Assembly (NCBI RefSeq): GCF_000315625.1
Contig: NW_005434539.1
Span: forward strand, 113,501 to 177,500
Direction: 5' to 3'
DNA length: 64,000 nucleotides
Source of the DNA: Guillardia theta CCMP2712
Lineage: Eukaryota > Protista > Cryptophyta
Shown here in pieces: positions 13,445-64,000 of this stretch. Positions within the stretch are counted from its first letter, which is position 1. The number at the start of each line of letters is the position of its first letter. The translations under genes were made by a program, and so were the position numbers. The notes beneath the pieces are model-generated. The model was not told the DNA's origin, did no database searches, and saw only the letters and a program-made list of their open reading frames with translations.

Positions 13445-14810
13445 TCAGCACATGGAATGATCCGCGCTCTCACGCTTTCCCTCGGAGTCATCGGAATGAG
13501 ACTTTTCGCTCAGCGTCCCGGCGTTTCTCTTCATGGCTCGTAGGATCTTGTTGATGTCGTTGAACTCCTGCTTGTCTCCGTTCTTCGCCTTCCCGTTGCC
13601 GACCTCAAGATCGTCCTCGGAGCCCGAGTCGTCCTTCTTCTTTCCCTTGCCCGACTTCTTCTTCTTTCCCTTGTTCTTCTTCTCACTCTCCGATTCGCTG
13701 CTGTGATGATCGTCGTCGTCGGCGCCTCCTCGATGCTTCCTCCTGTAGTCCCGCGCGTCTCCTTTCTTCTTCCTCTTCGGCCTCGAGTCATCCGACTCCT
13801 CGTCGCTCAACCTGATCCTGTCCTCTAGATGCGCCGGCGCCAGCTCCCACTTCTGCCTCCTCTTTGACTTCCTCACCGAGCCGATGACGCGTCCGAACAT
13901 CCGGATGTTGACTTCATCGTTGGGGGGAGCATTCTTCTCATGGTTCAGCCCAAACGGATCGTCGGCCTCCGGCTTCTCCTGTCCTGGAAGGCATGCAGGG
14001 TCCCACTTCCCTTCCAACACGCCCCATGCCGTGCTCCACAGGATCACTCCGTAGGTGTTCTTGCAGAGCCCGTCGGCGAGGAGGTACAGGATAGCGCTCA
14101 CGTTCTCATGAATGACGCAGACGCCAGTGGGGGATATCAGCCATACGATGGGGAACATGGTCCATGCGATGAAGAAGATGAGTCTGAGCATCTTGATTCT
14201 CACCACCACCTTCTGAGCCAGCGGAGTCCCCACGCTCTCAAACCCGTACAGCCCGACTTGAAAGATGGTGAAGACAACTGAGTACTCAAAGACCAGGCAC
14301 GTGGCCCCGAAGAAGAAAAAGAGCCACTTCATGTACTCGGCGGGAGAGATAGTCGCCGTGATTCCCATCACCACTCGGATGATGGAGGCTGCTTGCGCGA
14401 TGGGATTCAACGGGATGCTCTTGTACTTCACCAGCGCCATGTTGCTGATCTGCCCGAGCATGATAGGGCAAGTGCACAACCAGGATGCCATGCGCGACCA
14501 AGGAAAGAAGCGCCCGTCCCTCATCTGCAACGTGCCGTTTCCAGTAGAAGCGAGGGCATAGGTGATGCTTTCAACGAAGGGAAGGTAAACAGATTCCCAT
14601 GGCACCTTCGGGGCTCGAGAGATCATAAAGATCGTCTGGCATCCGCTGACAACAGCCTGTCAACAACCGTCATGCTCAAGGTCAAGCTCAAACATCTTTC
14701 AGTACCCAGACCAGCTGCAGCAATGAGACAAAGGTGCTGTCGATCCTTGACATGTTGTAACATTCTGTATGCGTACTCGCCCATTCTCCATAAACGACTT
14801 GGCTTGCCAT
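13445..14810 (-). CDS. ACR2: Anion channelrhodopsin 2 (light-gated anion channel), 438 aa; exons 14810-14706 and 14656-13445
   Basis: A 49-nt GT..AG intron (14705-14657) joins MASQVVYGEWASTHTECYNMSRIDSTFVSLLQLVW to AVVSGCQTIFMISRAPKVPWE. 7TM domain with TM3 PWSRMASWLCTCP (R90; S93 at the BR-Asp85 position; C98), TM2 E64 and TM7 ADGLCKN (D230, retinal K234). Matches GtACR2 as I recall it. About 150-aa charged cytoplasmic tail. Confidence 0.97.
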
Positions 14811-56775: not shown

Positions 56776-57768
56776 TCAAAAAATGAAAGTAGATTCATCG
56801 TAATCGTCCTCGACTTCACCTTCACATGTTATCTCGGGGATTCGCTCTCCATTCTCATCAAGAAATGCAGACATCCTTGCAAGCCCAGTAGAAAACAACC
56901 ATTTGTTCTCATTCTCGAAGAATGTATGCTCCTCCGTATCCATTGTGTCATATCGCAGATCACCATCATCCTCAGCGAACAGCACAGGGCTCCTGCCCTC
57001 GTATTCCTTCAACAAAGCTTCACTTTCTGCCGTACAGCGCTCTTCAAATTCTTTTCTCAAACGCGCAGTGCGCTGTTCAAGCTTTCTTTCAAAAGCTCGC
57101 TCTTTTTCGAACAGAATAGGTTCCATTTCGGCAGACCAATCCTTGTCTGCCAACACTGAACTCATCATCTTTTTCTCGATTTCCAATCTGAAATTGTCAA
57201 GCTCACGAGCCTCGCATTGTAGGTCGACTCGCTCCCTTTGCTCTCTTTCAAGTCGGTATTTGCGCTCCTTCAAAACATGATCCATGGCCTCTCGTCGCTT
57301 CCGCAAGGCTTCACAAATCTTATCGTGTTCTTTCCGCTTGTCGGGATTTCTGCGACTCATTTCACCAATTCGACTTAGCAGATCTCCGAGCTCCCTCTTG
57401 CGTTGCGAGAAGTATCGCCGCTCTCGCCGATCTCTCCTTAGCTGCTCGTGGTCAGGATACTCATTCAGGCAAGGCTCTGAAGCAGGGACGACATCCATGC
57501 AGACAACGACAGCCATGTTGCGAGCTTCTCCCATATAAGTATCAATCGTCTCCCGGCTGAGGCGTTTGAGCATGAACCCCATCAGCATATTGCGGGCCAA
57601 GAAACCGTCTGCAAGGAACGCTTGATAGAAGCGGTCCAAACATGCTGCTACTTTTGCGTCGGGTCTGTAACGAACGTCGCGGTAATCAACAAACAGACTC
57701 GCGCCGTGCATAACGCCAGCTTTCTTGTGGTAGAAGGCTGCAACATAAGTCACGAGGGCATAGGGCAA
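56776..57768 (-). CDS. Hypothetical intronless coiled-coil protein (~311-330 aa)
   Basis: Long clean ORF with a charged helical middle. First ATG is at about 57711; the listed start is non-ATG. Confidence 0.6.
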   Translation of the reverse strand: MPYALVTYVAAFYHKKAGVMHGASLFVDYRDVRYRPDAKVAACLDRFYQAFLADGFLARNMLMGFMLKRLSRETIDTYMGEARNMAVVVCMDVVPASEPCLNEYPDHEQLRRDRRERRYFSQRKRELGDLLSRIGEMSRRNPDKRKEHDKICEALRKRREAMDHVLKERKYRLEREQRERVDLQCEARELDNFRLEIEKKMMSSVLADKDWSAEMEPILFEKERAFERKLEQRTARLRKEFEERCTAESEALLKEYEGRSPVLFAEDDGDLRYDTMDTEEHTFFENENKWLFSTGLARMSAFLDENGERIPEITCEGEVEDDYDESTFIF

Positions 57769-60832: not shown

Positions 60833-62048
60833 CTACTCTTGGTGGTCTCCCGTCAAGGTTGGCTTGAAGCACAGAGAGATGGTAGGGAGATCTCGACTTG
60901 TCTTGAAGAAGCGTCAGGGAACGAGTTCTCACACTCTTATCATACATGTAGGAACATGGCAATAAACGAGAACTTGGAGATGAAGTCGATGACAGCATAC
61001 ATCACTTCCTTCAAGTTCCATGCAATGGTCCCACTGCCGTCTCCAATCGCCCAGAGAGCAGGGTAGAGGGACCTGGAACCGACTCAGAGGCGGCATGCGG
61101 TCAAACTTCACACCATGTGATGATCACAACACGGACAAGCTTCTTGTAAGACTGGAGCACCATGTTTCTCTCGGCCGTCTTCATCAGAGGGCTAGAGCGC
61201 GTCACCTGTCATTCAGTCGACAGCGCGCGAGAAGAGCCGCTCACCACTGACTCGACGCCAGTTGATTCATCAGCATGACAAACAACCCCAGCCCGAAGAC
61301 CCAGTACGTCCACTGATCAAGCATCATACAGACGGAAAACAGCAAACCTTGCAAACCTTGGATATCTGAGAGGCTGGCACGATAGTCCCGATGACCCCAC
61401 AAGTATGCAGAGCAGCATTTATCATGAAGAGATATGTTTTATATTCCCAGTTAATCAGCGTCTTGTACTTCTTCTGCTTCGAAATGTTCTTGCTGCTGTC
61501 GACGACAACTGCAAAAACATTCAAAATTCAGCTCAGATACTTTTTTGTCAACCTGTAAGGATGAAAAGATCAATCGAAGTAGAGAATGTCCAGAAAACAT
61601 TCCTCATCCAATACACAGGGGGGTTTGTTGGTCTATGTAACATGACCCCTGGCTGCAGGATAATTCCTGGCTCGACTTTCACATCGTAAACTTCATAAAG
61701 CAAACCGATGTTAAGACTCATGAAAAGATACATGGAAGCCGTAATGAGGAACTGCAAGGAGAAAATCCAATACAACAGGCAATTCCTTTGAAAGCTCTCG
61801 ATAGAAAATGTAAGAGCCAGGATTATTGACGCAGCTGCAAGGAATAATGCCATACAGATGTACCATAATGTGTATGGGTTAAAATCAGCATACTGTATCC
61901 CTAAATAGTTTGTAGACGTTGTTGAGTTGTATTCCCCGATCAGGTCTGAAAACGTGAGATTCTGAAAGCCCGATGGTGTGTTTGATGAAATGTTCTGGTT
62001 GATCACAACATCCAGGACGGTTGTGGTTGAGTTTTGAGTTGTGCTCAT
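60833..62048 (-). CDS. Microbial (type-1) rhodopsin, atypical TM3 (F/S/I at BR 85/89/96); exons 62048-61553, 61508-61357, 61312-61245, 61191-61114, 61072-60946, last exon(s) uncertain
   Basis: Introns of 41-53 nt (GT..AG) join TM3 VYWMRNVFWTFSTSIDLFIL, TM4 INAALHTCGVIG, TM5 KWTYWVFGLGLF, TM6 IITWSLYPALWAIG and TM7 MYAVIDFISKFSF (DxxxK; retinal Lys codon 60975-60973). Confidence 0.9.
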
Positions 62049-62250: not shown

Positions 62251-63192
62251 ATGGAGGGGCTGTGCAACGGCGGCAACACGTCTATCGCAAGAGTCAAGAG
62301 AGTCTTGTTGGAGATCGCTAACAGGCTCGAGATCAACGTTGAAGGCATCGACATGGAGGAGGATTTGAACACCAAGTCCTGGAACGGGTCCAAGCTATGC
62401 ATCCTCCTCGGCTCCACGGAGGATGCTCGACGCATGATGAAGGAGCTGCCCTTCTATCTCGAAGGCGCAGCAACCAAGCTCGAAGCAGTCGGCTTCGACA
62501 AGGAGCCTGACTCTGAGGCGGCTGGTCAGCGGGGCACCAGCGACGCAGCGCAGCGACAGGAGGAGAGCGAGGGAGAGTGGCTGGAGTTTACAGACCTGGA
62601 GAGGATCACCATGGAGGCAGCATCTCCGTCAAGCCAAGAGGACATGCAGCTCGTCAGCGAGCTGTCAGCAGTCATCGAAGATGCAGCTTCTTTGAACGAG
62701 GCGGGGACGAGCGAGCCGATCAAGCTGGTCCTGGACAAGGCCGTTGGCAACCTCCACGACACGTTCTACTCTCCGGGGAGCCTGGAGTTCATGTCGCTGG
62801 GAGAGTGGGCGAAGATGCCAGAGGAGCAGGGAGTTGGGCGCAACGTTCTCAAGGAGAAGCTGGGGAAGTGGCTGCAGAGCAAGCGCTGGACTCGCGTGCA
62901 AGGAGAGAGCAAGAAGGCAAGGAGGGGCAGCGCGTTCTCGCCACGGGCAACGGCAGCTGCTGAGCTTGAGCAGGAGGCGGAGAGCGACGACATAGAGCGT
63001 CGATCTCTTAGCTTCCTGTTCATAGCACTGAGTAAATTCGCAGAGATGCATGTGCTGGCCTGCTCGCTGAAGGTGGACAAGAAGGACCGACTGCGGGTGG
63101 AGATGAGGGAAGATGGCGAAGCAGAGGAAGACATGGAGGAAGAGCAAGGCGAGGGCGAGGAAGAAGACGGGGCGAGCCCGTACCGAGCTTGA
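62251..63192 (+). CDS. Hypothetical subtelomeric acidic protein, 313 aa, intronless
   Basis: ATG-initiated long ORF with protein-like composition; no domain recognised. Confidence 0.6.
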   Translation: MEGLCNGGNTSIARVKRVLLEIANRLEINVEGIDMEEDLNTKSWNGSKLCILLGSTEDARRMMKELPFYLEGAATKLEAVGFDKEPDSEAAGQRGTSDAAQRQEESEGEWLEFTDLERITMEAASPSSQEDMQLVSELSAVIEDAASLNEAGTSEPIKLVLDKAVGNLHDTFYSPGSLEFMSLGEWAKMPEEQGVGRNVLKEKLGKWLQSKRWTRVQGESKKARRGSAFSPRATAAAELEQEAESDDIERRSLSFLFIALSKFAEMHVLACSLKVDKKDRLRVEMREDGEAEEDMEEEQGEGEEEDGASPYRA

Positions 63193-63222: not shown

Positions 63223-63430
63223 GGCGACCGAAGGCCAAGGTGAGGAGAGGCAACTCTCCTGACTGAAGCTGAGGAAGCTGAATGGAGGATGAGTAGGTGG
63301 CGACCGAAGGCCAAGGTGAGGAGAGGCAACTCTCCTGACTGAGGCTGAGGAAGCTGAATGGAGGTAGAGTAGGTGGTGACCGAAGGCCAAGGTGAGGAGA
63401 GGCAACTCTCCTAACTGAGGCTGAGGAAGC
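63223..63430. repeat. Subtelomeric 76-bp tandem repeat (about 2.7 copies)
   Basis: GG[C/T]GACCGAAGGCCAAGGTGAGGAGAGGCAACTCTCCT at 63223, 63299 and 63375. Confidence 0.9.
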
Positions 63431-63528
63431 CAAGAGAAGACAGCAAAAGTAGAAAGTAGAAAGACGCCTCAGAAGCAGGGTTCGCATTGTAGGCCGTGTA
63501 CTCCCAGTGCTCGAGCGCCTCTTTAGAC

Positions 63529-63716
63529 TAGGATCAAATTGCATAAGCCCACAACGAGGCCGAGCAACATTCTAGCATTCTCATAAACTCACATAATAAT
63601 AATAATAATAATAATAATAGGGTTTAGGATCAAATTGCAAAAGCCCACAAGGAGGCCGAGCAACATTCTAGCATTCTAATAAACTCACATAATAATAATA
63701 ATAATAATAGGGTTTG
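63529..63716. repeat. Telomere-associated ~95-bp repeat, two copies, each ending (TAA)n-AGGGTTT
   Basis: TAGGATCAAATTGCA..GCCCACAA..GAGGCCGAGCAACATTCTAGCATTCT occurs twice. Confidence 0.9.
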
Positions 63717-63776
63717 CTGGAGTTTACACTGACCTGGAGAGGATCACAATGGAAGCAGCTTCTCCATGGAGGCAGC

Positions 63777-64000
63777 TTTAGGGTTTAAGGTTTCGGGTTT
63801 AGGGTTTAGGGTTCAGGGTTTAGGGTTTAGGGTTTAGGGTTTGGGGTTTAGGGTTTAGGGTTTAGGGTTTAGGGTTTAGGGTTTAGGGTTTAGGGTTTAG
63901 GGTTTAGGGTTTAGGGTTTAGGGTTTAGGGTTTAGGGTTTAGGGTTTAGGGTTTAGGGTTTAGGGTTTAGGGTTTAGGGTTTAGGGTTTAGGGGTTTAGG
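63777..64000 (+). repeat. Telomere (TTTAGGG)n
   Basis: G-rich strand runs 5'->3' to the window end. Degenerate proximal units (TTTAAGG, TTTCGGG, TTCAGGG) are followed by mostly perfect repeats. Confidence 0.98.

What the first reader, a model, noticed from the sequence alone, without database searches (positions are those of the whole stretch)
60833..62048. Second, fragmented rhodopsin with Phe at the counterion position, 2 kb from the telomere
Seen: manual splicing yields a complete 7TM type-1 opsin that the ORF track shows only in pieces. Aligned to bacteriorhodopsin TM3 (YWARYADWLFTTPLLLLD) it reads YWMRNVFWTFSTSIDLFI. R82 and W86 are kept; D85->F, T89->S, P91->S, D96->I; and a new Asp appears at position 93. 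D212/K216 equivalents are intact (DFISK). It also has a Lys-rich TM3-TM4 loop insertion (DSSKNISKQKKYKT) and a ~55-aa N-terminus with several N-x-S/T sites. Inference: it binds retinal but is not a canonical proton pump and is not ACR-like. It is a candidate sensory or atypical ion-transporting rhodopsin. G. theta has many opsin genes, so it may be catalogued; I cannot tell whether it has been characterised.
Basis: partly seen in the sequence, partly recalled or inferred. Interest (0 to 1): 0.75.

Follow-up and report, generated by a model that had tools for sequence, protein, structure and literature searches.

The report
Known but uncharacterised Guillardia opsin gene
This is a real, intact, transcribed six-exon gene for a retinal-binding light receptor of the alga Guillardia theta; it is already listed in the literature as Gt_146834 but has never been tested, and it sits on a small algal branch of the rhodopsin family that lacks the usual proton-accepting residue.

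Summary
On the minus strand, window 60833-62048 carries six exons joined by five GT-AG introns of 41-53 nt. The spliced 329-aa product is letter-for-letter identical to a G. theta transcriptome protein (UniRef A0A7S4UWW5). It is a type-1 rhodopsin: Pfam PF01036 at 58.8 bits, and a 7TM model that superposes on pump-type rhodopsins.
- Kept: R149, W153, W265, Y268, P269, W272, D294, K298.
- Changed: D85->F152, T89->S156, P91->S158, L93->D160, D96->I163.

It is not new. It is Gt_146834 (XM_005821936.1) in Konno et al. 2020, with no reported function. That RefSeq model seems to run on to an unrelated ORF about 3 kb downstream.

New context:
- A 73%-identical Hanusia phi orthologue has Leu, not Phe, at the D85 site.
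- The gene belongs to a small clade of algal and metagenomic rhodopsins (SH-aLRT 97).
- Across that clade the D85 site varies freely (F/L/M/T/S/A/D).
- The BR-D115 site is always His, and the L93 site is polar (D/Q/E) in most members.

It cannot be a BR-type outward pump, and it fails the membership tests for schizorhodopsins and ACRs. My best guess is a slow-cycling photosensor. Inward proton transport or a channel remain open.

The parts
61553..62048 (-). Exon 1 (codons 1-165 plus 1 nt). It encodes the glycosylation-rich N-terminus, TM1, TM2, the B-C beta-hairpin and TM3. Key codons: Q99, Y107, R149, F152 (61593-61595), W153, S156, S158, D160 (61569-61571), I163.
   Evidence: ORF. Splice donor ACAG|GTTGAC. 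Residue-to-codon map. Unique in the genome.
61357..61508 (-). Exon 2. It encodes the end of TM3, the Lys-rich cytoplasmic C-D loop and TM4, including H200 (61405-61407, the BR D115 position).
   Evidence: The transcript uses the first GT of the tandem AAGGTTTGC/AAGGTTTGC. The published RefSeq-based sequence carries three extra residues (VCK), as expected from the second GT.
61245..61312 (-). Exon 3: TM5 (WTYWVFGLGLFVMLMNQLASSQ).
61114..61191 (-). Exon 4: the E-F loop helix and the first half of TM6, up to W265 (a split codon).
60946..61072 (-). Exon 5: the rest of TM6 (Y268, P269, W272), the F-G loop (D276, K286) and TM7 with D294, S297 and K298 (60973-60975).
   Evidence: This exon alone hits PF01036 at 27.6 bits, E = 2.4e-6.
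60833..60901 (-). Exon 6: a 22-aa C-terminal tail and the TAG stop (60833-60835).
   Evidence: It matches the C-terminus of transcript protein P0002. The Hanusia orthologue ends at the same length.

Best explanation
Shown. Window 60833-62048 (minus strand) is the intact, transcribed, six-exon gene Gt_146834 of Guillardia theta. It encodes a 329-aa type-1 (microbial) rhodopsin with a complete retinal pocket and the Schiff-base lysine K298. It belongs to a small, distinct clade of algal and environmental-eukaryote rhodopsins.

Inferred from sequence and from established bacteriorhodopsin (BR) and schizorhodopsin biophysics.
- D294 (BR D212), paired with R149, would be the only extracellular counterion.
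- There is no extracellular proton acceptor (F152 at D85).
- There is no proton-release pair (D276/K286 in place of E194/E204).
- There is no cytoplasmic proton donor (I163 at D96).
- It therefore cannot work as a BR-type outward proton pump.
- The hydrophobic plug between the Schiff base and the cytoplasm (BR V49 and L93) is replaced by Q99 and D160.
- The T90-D115 pair is replaced by T157 and a clade-invariant H200.
- Loss of Leu93 lengthens the BR photocycle about 100-fold, so I expect a slow photocycle.

The cytoplasmic loops and the extracellular N-terminus and B-C hairpin are conserved more strongly than TM1 and TM2. Taking this together, my most likely reading is a slow-cycling photosensory receptor that signals through its loops, not an energy-converting pump. 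The identity part is near-certain (about 0.97). The sensor mechanism is a guess at about 0.4. The confidence given for this field (0.4) is for the whole statement, mechanism included.
For: Identity.
- The spliced translation equals P0002, a G. theta transcript protein.
- PF01036 scores 58.8 bits against a cut-off of 24.6.
- The AlphaFold model has 7 TM helices plus a B-C hairpin, pTM 0.72.
- Best folds are pump-type rhodopsins at Z 23-25, rmsd 2.0-2.2 A over 215-220 residues.
- The sequence is present as Gt_146834 in the Konno 2020 S1 Dataset, and their forward primer equals our ATG.

Residue assignments: HMMER alignment to BR, the family table and the codon map.

Selection: the Hanusia phi orthologue is 73% identical and keeps R149, S156, D160, I163, Q99, H200, D294, K298 and all four sequons.

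Loop conservation between the two species: B-C loop 84%, E-F 80%, N-terminus 75%, C-D 71%, against TM1 68% and TM2 58%.

Clade: 8 members form one clade with SH-aLRT 97. His at the BR D115 position is found only in them among the 49 rhodopsins in the tree.

Role of L93: BR L93A lengthens the photocycle by two orders of magnitude, and SzR4 L78A abolishes transport (PMC8040798).
Against: - There is no functional data at all.
- Known sensory rhodopsins (SRI, SRII, ASR) keep a carboxylate at D85; this protein does not.
- No transducer, enzyme domain or partner gene was identified.
- Loop conservation is measured on only two close species.
- The best structural match is nominally an inward pump (BcXeR, Z 25.1), although it is tied with many others.
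Confidence: 0.4

Rival explanations
1. Inward proton transporter, working like schizorhodopsins or xenorhodopsins. D294 is the sole counterion and position 85 is neutral. After isomerisation the Schiff-base proton leaves towards the cytoplasm through the polar Q99/D160/H200 cluster, and reprotonation comes from outside.
For: - The F-S pattern at BR D85/T89 and Ser at P91 match SzR4 (F70, S74, S76).
- In SzR a neutral residue at this site is required: F70A keeps inward transport, while F70D and F70E abolish it.
- There is a carboxylate in the cytoplasmic half of TM3 (D160).
- The E194/E204 release group is absent, as in SzR4.
- The top structural hit is the inward pump BcXeR, Z 25.1.
Against: - Residues essential in SzR are missing. 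Cys at T90 is Thr here. Leu at L93 (SzR4 L78, whose L78A mutant is dead) is Asp here. Glu at D96 is Ile here.
- Loss of the L93 plug predicts a slow cycle, which suits a pump poorly.
- The BcXeR match is tied within 1 Z unit with a chloride pump and with outward pumps. SzR4 itself scores only Z 20.9.
Confidence: 0.22
2. Light-gated passive channel (anion or cation) of a new type. The absence of the D85 carboxylate and a hydrophilic cytoplasmic half-channel would allow conductance during a long-lived open state.
For: - A non-carboxylate at D85 is typical of anion channelrhodopsins. Apusomonad anion channels include MTQ and ATQ members with Met or Ala at this site.
- A T157-H200 pair sits where the channelrhodopsin DC gate sits.
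- The polar L93 position predicts a long-lived photoproduct.
Against: - The ACR-type TM3 signature is absent.
- The predicted fold is closer to pumps (Z 23-25) than to GtACR1 (19.1), C1C2 (18.9), GtCCR2 (20.1) or ChRmine (18.2).
- TM2 lacks the channelrhodopsin glutamates.
Confidence: 0.15
3. A decaying subtelomeric gene copy, or a retinal-free 'opsin-like' protein with no photochemistry.
For: - It lies 1.7 kb from a telomere.
- It is not among the 25 G. theta rhodopsin genes quantified by RT-qPCR in Konno 2020.
Against: - The reading frame is intact across six exons, with canonical splice sites.
- A complete transcript exists.
- The Hanusia orthologue is 73% identical and the same length, with every retinal-pocket residue kept.
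- A 95%-identical exon 1 from another sample shows only conservative changes.
- The qPCR absence is explained by the mis-modelled 3' end used for the full-length primer.
Confidence: 0.04

Closest known systems
Gt_146834 / XM_005821936.1 (one of 42 rhodopsin-like genes of G. theta; Konno et al. 2020, PMC7714340)
   Same: It is the same locus. Their forward RT-PCR primer equals our ATG and the next 17 nt. Their S1 Dataset sequence matches from TM1 to TM7.
   Different: - Their RefSeq-based sequence has three extra residues (VCK) from a donor 9 nt downstream.
- It lacks 20 residues of the B-C hairpin in the published alignment; I do not know why.
- The model's 3' end (...ESTFIF) maps to window 56779-56796, at the end of an unrelated 330-aa ORF about 3 kb downstream.
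- The transcript protein and the Hanusia orthologue both stop at 329 aa.
Hanusia phi A0A7S0HY48 (P0003), uncharacterised
   Same: Orthologue: 329 aa, 73% identical, same loops and sequons. It keeps S156, D160, I163, Q99, H200, D294 and K298.
   Different: It has Leu instead of Phe at the BR D85 position and Thr instead of Ser at the P91 position.
Schizorhodopsins / AntR (FSE motif; inward H+ pumps)
   Same: Phe at BR D85, Ser at T89, Ser at P91 (as in SzR4), a single counterion at BR D212, and no E194/E204 pair.
   Different: - No Glu at D96 (Ile here), no Cys at T90 (Thr here), and Asp where the essential Leu78 (BR L93) sits.
- The protein is about 130 aa longer than SzR4, with a long N-terminus and long loops.
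- Structurally SzR4 (Z 20.9) is no closer than a dozen other families.
- It is not a member.
Haloarchaeal bacteriorhodopsin / archaerhodopsins
   Same: These are the best sequence hits among solved structures (E about 2e-8, roughly 21-22% identity). They share the fold, including the B-C beta-hairpin, and the retinal-pocket residues W86, W182, Y185, P186, W189, D212 and K216.
   Different: The D85, D96 and E204 functional carboxylates are replaced by F, I and K. L93 becomes D, V49 becomes Q and D115 becomes H.
Apusomonad rhodopsins with MTQ/ATQ motifs (anion channels)
   Same: A hydrophobic or small residue at BR D85 in a working eukaryotic rhodopsin.
   Different: ApuRs have Tyr at BR W86 and Gln at D96, and those members have Glu at D212. 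Here the residues are W, I and D. I saw no specific sequence relationship.
Gt_151284 (P0016, L1JQI7, annotated 'Opsin'), uncharacterised G. theta paralogue
   Same: It is the nearest G. theta paralogue in the profile search (E = 4e-12). It also lacks carboxylates at D85 (Gln) and D96 (Leu). It groups loosely with the clade (SH-aLRT 93).
   Different: Only 24% identical. It has Lys at R82 and no His at D115, and it lies outside the 8-member clade.

Membership tests
Type-1 microbial rhodopsin (Pfam PF01036) | Profile match above the curated cut-off | tested here: met
   58.8 bits against a cut-off of 24.6, E = 6.9e-16, covering residues 61-308.
Type-1 microbial rhodopsin (Pfam PF01036) | Seven-helix fold superposable on solved rhodopsins | tested here: met
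   The model has helices at 58-82, 88-111, 144-168, 186-208, 214-235, 251-278 and 283-309. Z reaches 25.1 at rmsd 2.2 A over 220 residues.
Type-1 microbial rhodopsin (Pfam PF01036) | Schiff-base Lys in TM7 and a conserved retinal pocket | tested here: met
   K298, D294, W153, W265, Y268, P269 and W272 are all present.
Type-1 microbial rhodopsin (Pfam PF01036) | Binds retinal and forms a pigment | not testable with these tools
   This needs heterologous expression.
BR-type outward proton pump (DTD/DTE) | Carboxylate proton acceptor at BR D85 | tested here: not met
   F152 here; Leu in the Hanusia orthologue.
BR-type outward proton pump (DTD/DTE) | Carboxylate proton donor at BR D96 | tested here: not met
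   I163 here, conserved in Hanusia.
Schizorhodopsin / AntR | FSE motif (BR D85/T89/D96) | tested here: not met
   The motif is F-S-I in G. theta and L-S-I in Hanusia.
Schizorhodopsin / AntR | Essential Cys at BR T90 and Leu at BR L93 (SzR4 C75 and L78) | tested here: not met
   T157 and D160 here. Their essentiality comes from PMC8040798.
Schizorhodopsin / AntR | Specific sequence or structure kinship | tested here: not met
   SzR4 (7e4g) scores Z 20.9 at rank 17. AntR scores Z 19.4. Pump-type rhodopsins score 23-25. No SzR appears among the 60 best PDB sequence hits.
Cryptophyte anion channelrhodopsins (GtACR family) | ChR-type TM3 'TCP' signature | tested here: not met
   The sequence is WTFSTSIDL, against SWLCTCPIML in GtACR1 and Gt_146828.
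Cryptophyte anion channelrhodopsins (GtACR family) | Closest fold or sequence is an ACR | tested here: not met
   GtACR1 (6edq) scores Z 19.1 at rank 29. Similarity to the neighbouring ACR-type opsin locus L001 falls below the tblastn threshold.
Bacteriorhodopsin-like cation channelrhodopsins (BCCR; DTD) | DTD motif kept | tested here: not met
   The motif is F-S-I. GtCCR2 scores Z 20.1, GtCCR4 17.4 and ChRmine 18.2.
Clade defined here (G. theta, Hanusia and metagenomic algal rhodopsins) | One well-supported clade with shared hallmarks: an N-terminal NSTTT...QN.T motif, a B-C loop PPVxWxR(H/N)VxW motif, His at BR D115, and a DGS.TI.W..KE F-G loop | tested here: met
   SH-aLRT 97 for 8 rows. 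His at D115 occurs only in these rows among the 49.

The most novel reading that the evidence does not exclude
Gt_146834 and its relatives are a functionally new class of eukaryotic rhodopsin. In this class the TM3 counterion is dispensable. A clade-specific polar cluster on the cytoplasmic side of the Schiff base takes over proton or ion handling: an invariant His at BR D115, Asp/Gln/Glu at L93, and Gln at V49. The result would be either an inward-directed transporter with a mechanism unlike SzR and XeR, or a new kind of algal photosensor.
Probability: 0.25. Interest if true: 0.65.

Novelty: already known. Interest (0 to 1): 0.38.

Why it matters
The gene is already in the published catalogue of G. 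theta rhodopsins, so finding it is not a discovery. Two things are still useful to people who mine cryptophyte opsins for optogenetic tools and photobiology.

1. The reference gene model looks wrong at its 3' end. The published full-length RT-PCR primer sits on that end, which may be why this opsin was never expressed or quantified. The transcript-supported 329-aa ORF can be tested directly.

2. The gene represents an uncharacterised clade with an invariant His at the 'DC-gate' Asp position, a polar residue at the Leu93 plug, and a freely varying, mostly non-carboxylate residue at the primary counterion site. Characterising one member would show whether this architecture gives a sensor, an inward transporter or a channel.

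Tried and rejected
- Exon-by-exon searches. Exon 1 alone (166 aa, TM1-3) gave no Pfam hit and no rhodopsin hit in the PDB. It has no paralogue in the genome. Only the TM7 exon was recognised.
- The joined model was never sent to a search tool. It was built only inside scripts, to compare it with database protein P0002. P0002 is identical, and it was then used by reference for all whole-protein work.
- The word-based profile search and the ESM Atlas gave no taxon names for the GC-rich relatives. Their organisms remain unknown.
- The search for related loci with the 13-sequence alignment failed because no stretch was conserved enough. A narrower alignment found two loci.
- Yamauchi et al. 2017 (PMC5468465) is not held.
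- Rejected readings:
  - Pseudogene: rejected because of the intact frame, the transcript and the orthologue.
  - SzR, ACR or BCCR membership: rejected because defining residues are not met.
  - 'Phe is the key feature': rejected because the orthologue has Leu, and near-identical metagenomic copies differ (M against T) at this site.
  - The long RefSeq fusion as the true product: rejected because of the in-frame TAG in the transcript and the equal length of the orthologue.

Full report
**What is there**

The window is G000:C135:113501-177500 of an 87.1-Mb, 669-contig genome. That this is Guillardia theta follows from exact protein matches to G. theta records. The ORF list shows only fragments on the minus strand between 60.9 and 62.05 kb.

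Reading the three minus-strand frames and placing GT...AG boundaries gives six exons: 61553-62048, 61357-61508, 61245-61312, 61114-61191, 60946-61072 and 60833-60901. The introns are 44, 44, 53, 41 and 44 nt.

**How the spliced model was handled**

- The TM7 exon alone passes Pfam PF01036 (27.6 bits, E = 2.4e-6).
- Exon 1 alone is not recognised by Pfam or by PDB sequences.
- Exon 1 has no second copy in the genome.

The word search with exon 1 found one 95%-identical 166-aa ORF (P0001). Its 90% cluster also holds P0002, a 329-aa protein from the G. theta MMETSP transcriptome (UniRef100_A0A7S4UWW5).

A script showed that my six-exon translation is identical to P0002 over all 329 residues. I never sent the joined model to a search tool. 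All whole-protein searches used the database record P0002 by reference.

**What kind of protein it is**

- P0002 matches PF01036 at 58.8 bits (cut-off 24.6).
- Its best solved relatives by sequence are bacteriorhodopsin and the archaerhodopsins (E about 2e-8).
- An AlphaFold model built on the family alignment has seven TM helices and a B-C beta-hairpin (pTM 0.72, TM core pLDDT above 90).
- Foldseek and VIA-align place it with pump-type rhodopsins: BcXeR Z 25.1, MrHR 24.8, LR 24.4, HR 23.8.
- SzR4 (20.9), GtCCR2 (20.1), GtACR1 (19.1), C1C2 (18.9) and ChRmine (18.2) score lower.
- Rows within 1 Z unit of each other are ties, so this says 'pump-like architecture' and not a specific function.

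**Residues**

The HMMER alignment to bacteriorhodopsin (BR), the family table and the codon map give the following.

| BR position | Residue here |
|---|---|
| V49 | Q99 |
| Y57 | Y107 |
| R82 | R149 |
| D85 | F152 |
| W86 | W153 |
| T89 | S156 |
| T90 | T157 |
| P91 | S158 |
| L93 | D160 |
| D96 | I163 |
| D115 | H200 |
| W182 / Y185 / P186 / W189 | W265 / Y268 / P269 / W272 |
| E194 | D276 |
| E204 | K286 |
| D212 | D294 |
| A215 | S297 |
| K216 | K298 |

**It is already catalogued**

The S1 Dataset of Konno et al. 2020 (PMC7714340) holds this sequence as Gt_146834 (XM_005821936.1). Their forward RT-PCR primer is our ATGAGCACAACTCAAAACTC.

No other paper in the searchable library mentions 146834, GUITHDRAFT_146834 or A0A7S4UWW5. 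Konno et al. assign it no function.

Their reverse primer is designed on the RefSeq 3' end and maps to window 56779-56796. That is the end of a separate 330-aa Glu/Arg-rich ORF (56776-57768, no Pfam domain). The RefSeq model therefore seems to fuse the opsin to a downstream ORF.

The transcript protein stops at the TAG at 60833-60835, and the Hanusia orthologue has the same length. The published sequence also has three extra residues (VCK), consistent with the second GT of a 9-nt tandem.

Gt_146834 is not among the 25 genes quantified by RT-qPCR. Whether it was among the 29 genes amplified cannot be read, because that table is an image.

The other opsin in the window is Gt_146828, of the ACR family. 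From memory it is GtACR2.

**Relatives**

The word search finds only a Hanusia phi orthologue (P0003, 329 aa, 73% identical) and a mis-spliced version of it.

The word search and the family scans left the wider kinship open, and the novelty question rests on relatives. I therefore ran the exhaustive profile search. It found 88 proteins at E <= 1e-3, 16 at E <= 1e-10 and 8 at E <= 1e-30.

The close relatives are unnamed ENA, JGI and NCBI metagenome proteins. Many are cut at introns. Two genomic loci (metagenome Ga0315905) show introns of about 1 kb and a complete TM6-TM7 with the Asp and Lys.

A quick ML tree was built from 49 rows: 8 family members, the two intermediates P0016 and P0017, and the 39 more distant hits of 230-500 aa. 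Shorter fragments were left out. It puts the 8 family members on one side of a branch with SH-aLRT 97, and G. theta plus Hanusia are sisters at 100.

Features shared by the family:
- an N-terminal NSTTT...QN.T motif with several sequons
- a B-C hairpin ending in PPVxWxR(H/N)VxW
- His at the BR D115 position, seen in no other row of the tree
- a polar residue at BR L93 in most members: Q in most, D in G. theta, Hanusia and P0014, E in P0020, and Ala in two others
- a DGS.TI.W..KE F-G loop, which puts Lys at the BR E204 position

The residue at BR D85 varies freely:

| Residue at BR D85 | Sequence |
|---|---|
| F | G. theta; also the 95%-identical P0001 |
| L | Hanusia phi (P0003) |
| S | P0005, P0012, P0020 |
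| D | P0094, P0008 |
| M | P0104 |
| T | P0007 |
| A | P0014 |

P0104 and P0007 are about 85% identical yet differ at this site. So the Phe is one state of an unconstrained, mostly non-carboxylate site. It is not a conserved functional residue.

**Selection**

Between G. theta and Hanusia the loops are at least as conserved as the helices:
- B-C loop 84%
- E-F loop 80%
- N-terminus 75%
- C-D loop 71%
- TM1 68%
- TM2 58%

All four extracellular sequons are kept. The eight differences in P0001 are conservative. This is a gene under purifying selection, despite lying 1.7 kb from the (TTTAGGG)x32 telomere.

**Mechanism**

Shown:
- The retinal pocket and the Lys are present.
- There are no carboxylates at D85 or D96.
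- There is no E194/E204 pair.

Inferred:
- D294 with R149 is the sole counterion, as in SzR4, where D184 alone stabilises the protonated Schiff base (PMC8040798).
- A BR-type outward pump is excluded.

The SzR analogy (F-S at 85/89, Ser at P91) is real but incomplete. SzR needs Cys at T90, Leu at L93 and usually Glu at D96. Here these are Thr, Asp and Ile. SzR4 is also not a close structural or sequence neighbour.

A hydrophobic residue at D85 also occurs in blue-absorbing apusomonad anion channels (MTQ and ATQ motifs). The site alone therefore does not fix the function.

In BR, Leu93 and Val49 form the hydrophobic plug on the cytoplasmic side of the Schiff base. L93A slows the photocycle about 100-fold, and SzR4 L78A kills transport. 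Here the plug is Asp160 and Gln99, next to the invariant His200. I therefore expect a hydrated, slow-cycling active site.

Combined with the conserved cytoplasmic loops, I rank the readings as follows:

| Reading | Probability |
|---|---|
| Slow photosensor | about 0.4 |
| Inward H+ transporter | about 0.22 |
| Light-gated channel | about 0.15 |
| Dead gene | about 0.04 |
| Something else | the remainder |

None of these can be settled without expression and spectroscopy.

**Verdict**

- The gene is already known (catalogued), but its function is unknown.
- Interest is moderate: a corrected gene model and a defined, uncharacterised clade, but no surprise for a specialist.

Noticed in passing
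window 56776-57768 (-): A 330-aa Glu/Arg-rich, coiled-coil-like ORF with no Pfam domain. The RefSeq model of Gt_146834 appears to end here: the reverse primer of Konno 2020 maps to 56779-56796. This suggests a false fusion of two genes in the reference annotation.
   Followed up: partly
window 62251-63192 (+): A 313-aa acidic ORF with no Pfam hit. It is the last ORF before the telomere and lies head-to-head with the opsin gene, about 200 bp from its ATG.
   Followed up: partly
window 63223-64000: Subtelomeric tandem repeats (a 76-nt unit x2.7 at 63223-63430 and a 96-nt unit x1.9 at 63529-63709), followed by (TTTAGGG)x32 at 63777-64000, which runs to the end of the window.
   Followed up: yes
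window ~14024-14650 (-) = G000:C135:127524-128150 (L001): This is the first opsin in the window and the strongest PF01036 hit in the genome (139 bits). It is Gt_146828, of the anion-channelrhodopsin family (GtACR2 by my memory), about 47 kb from Gt_146834.
   Followed up: partly
L032:3001-5834 and L033:480-2984 (metagenome Ga0315905): Two related family members (their proteins P0104 and P0007 are about 85% identical), with introns of about 1 kb. They differ at the BR D85 position (Met against Thr). The source organism is unknown, and contig GC is 51-53%.
   Followed up: partly
P0001 (ENA contig of 863 bp): A 166-aa ORF, 95% identical to exon 1, that ends at the same intron read-through (…LTG stop). 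It is genomic DNA of a second Guillardia-like strain or population with eight conservative substitutions, and Phe152 is kept.
   Followed up: partly
G000, 64 PF01036 matches: Several identical or near-identical opsin loci occur in pairs (C38:270419 and C38:327426; C26:310696 and C26:311846, inverted; C3:271928). This indicates recent duplications of one opsin type in this genome.
   Followed up: no
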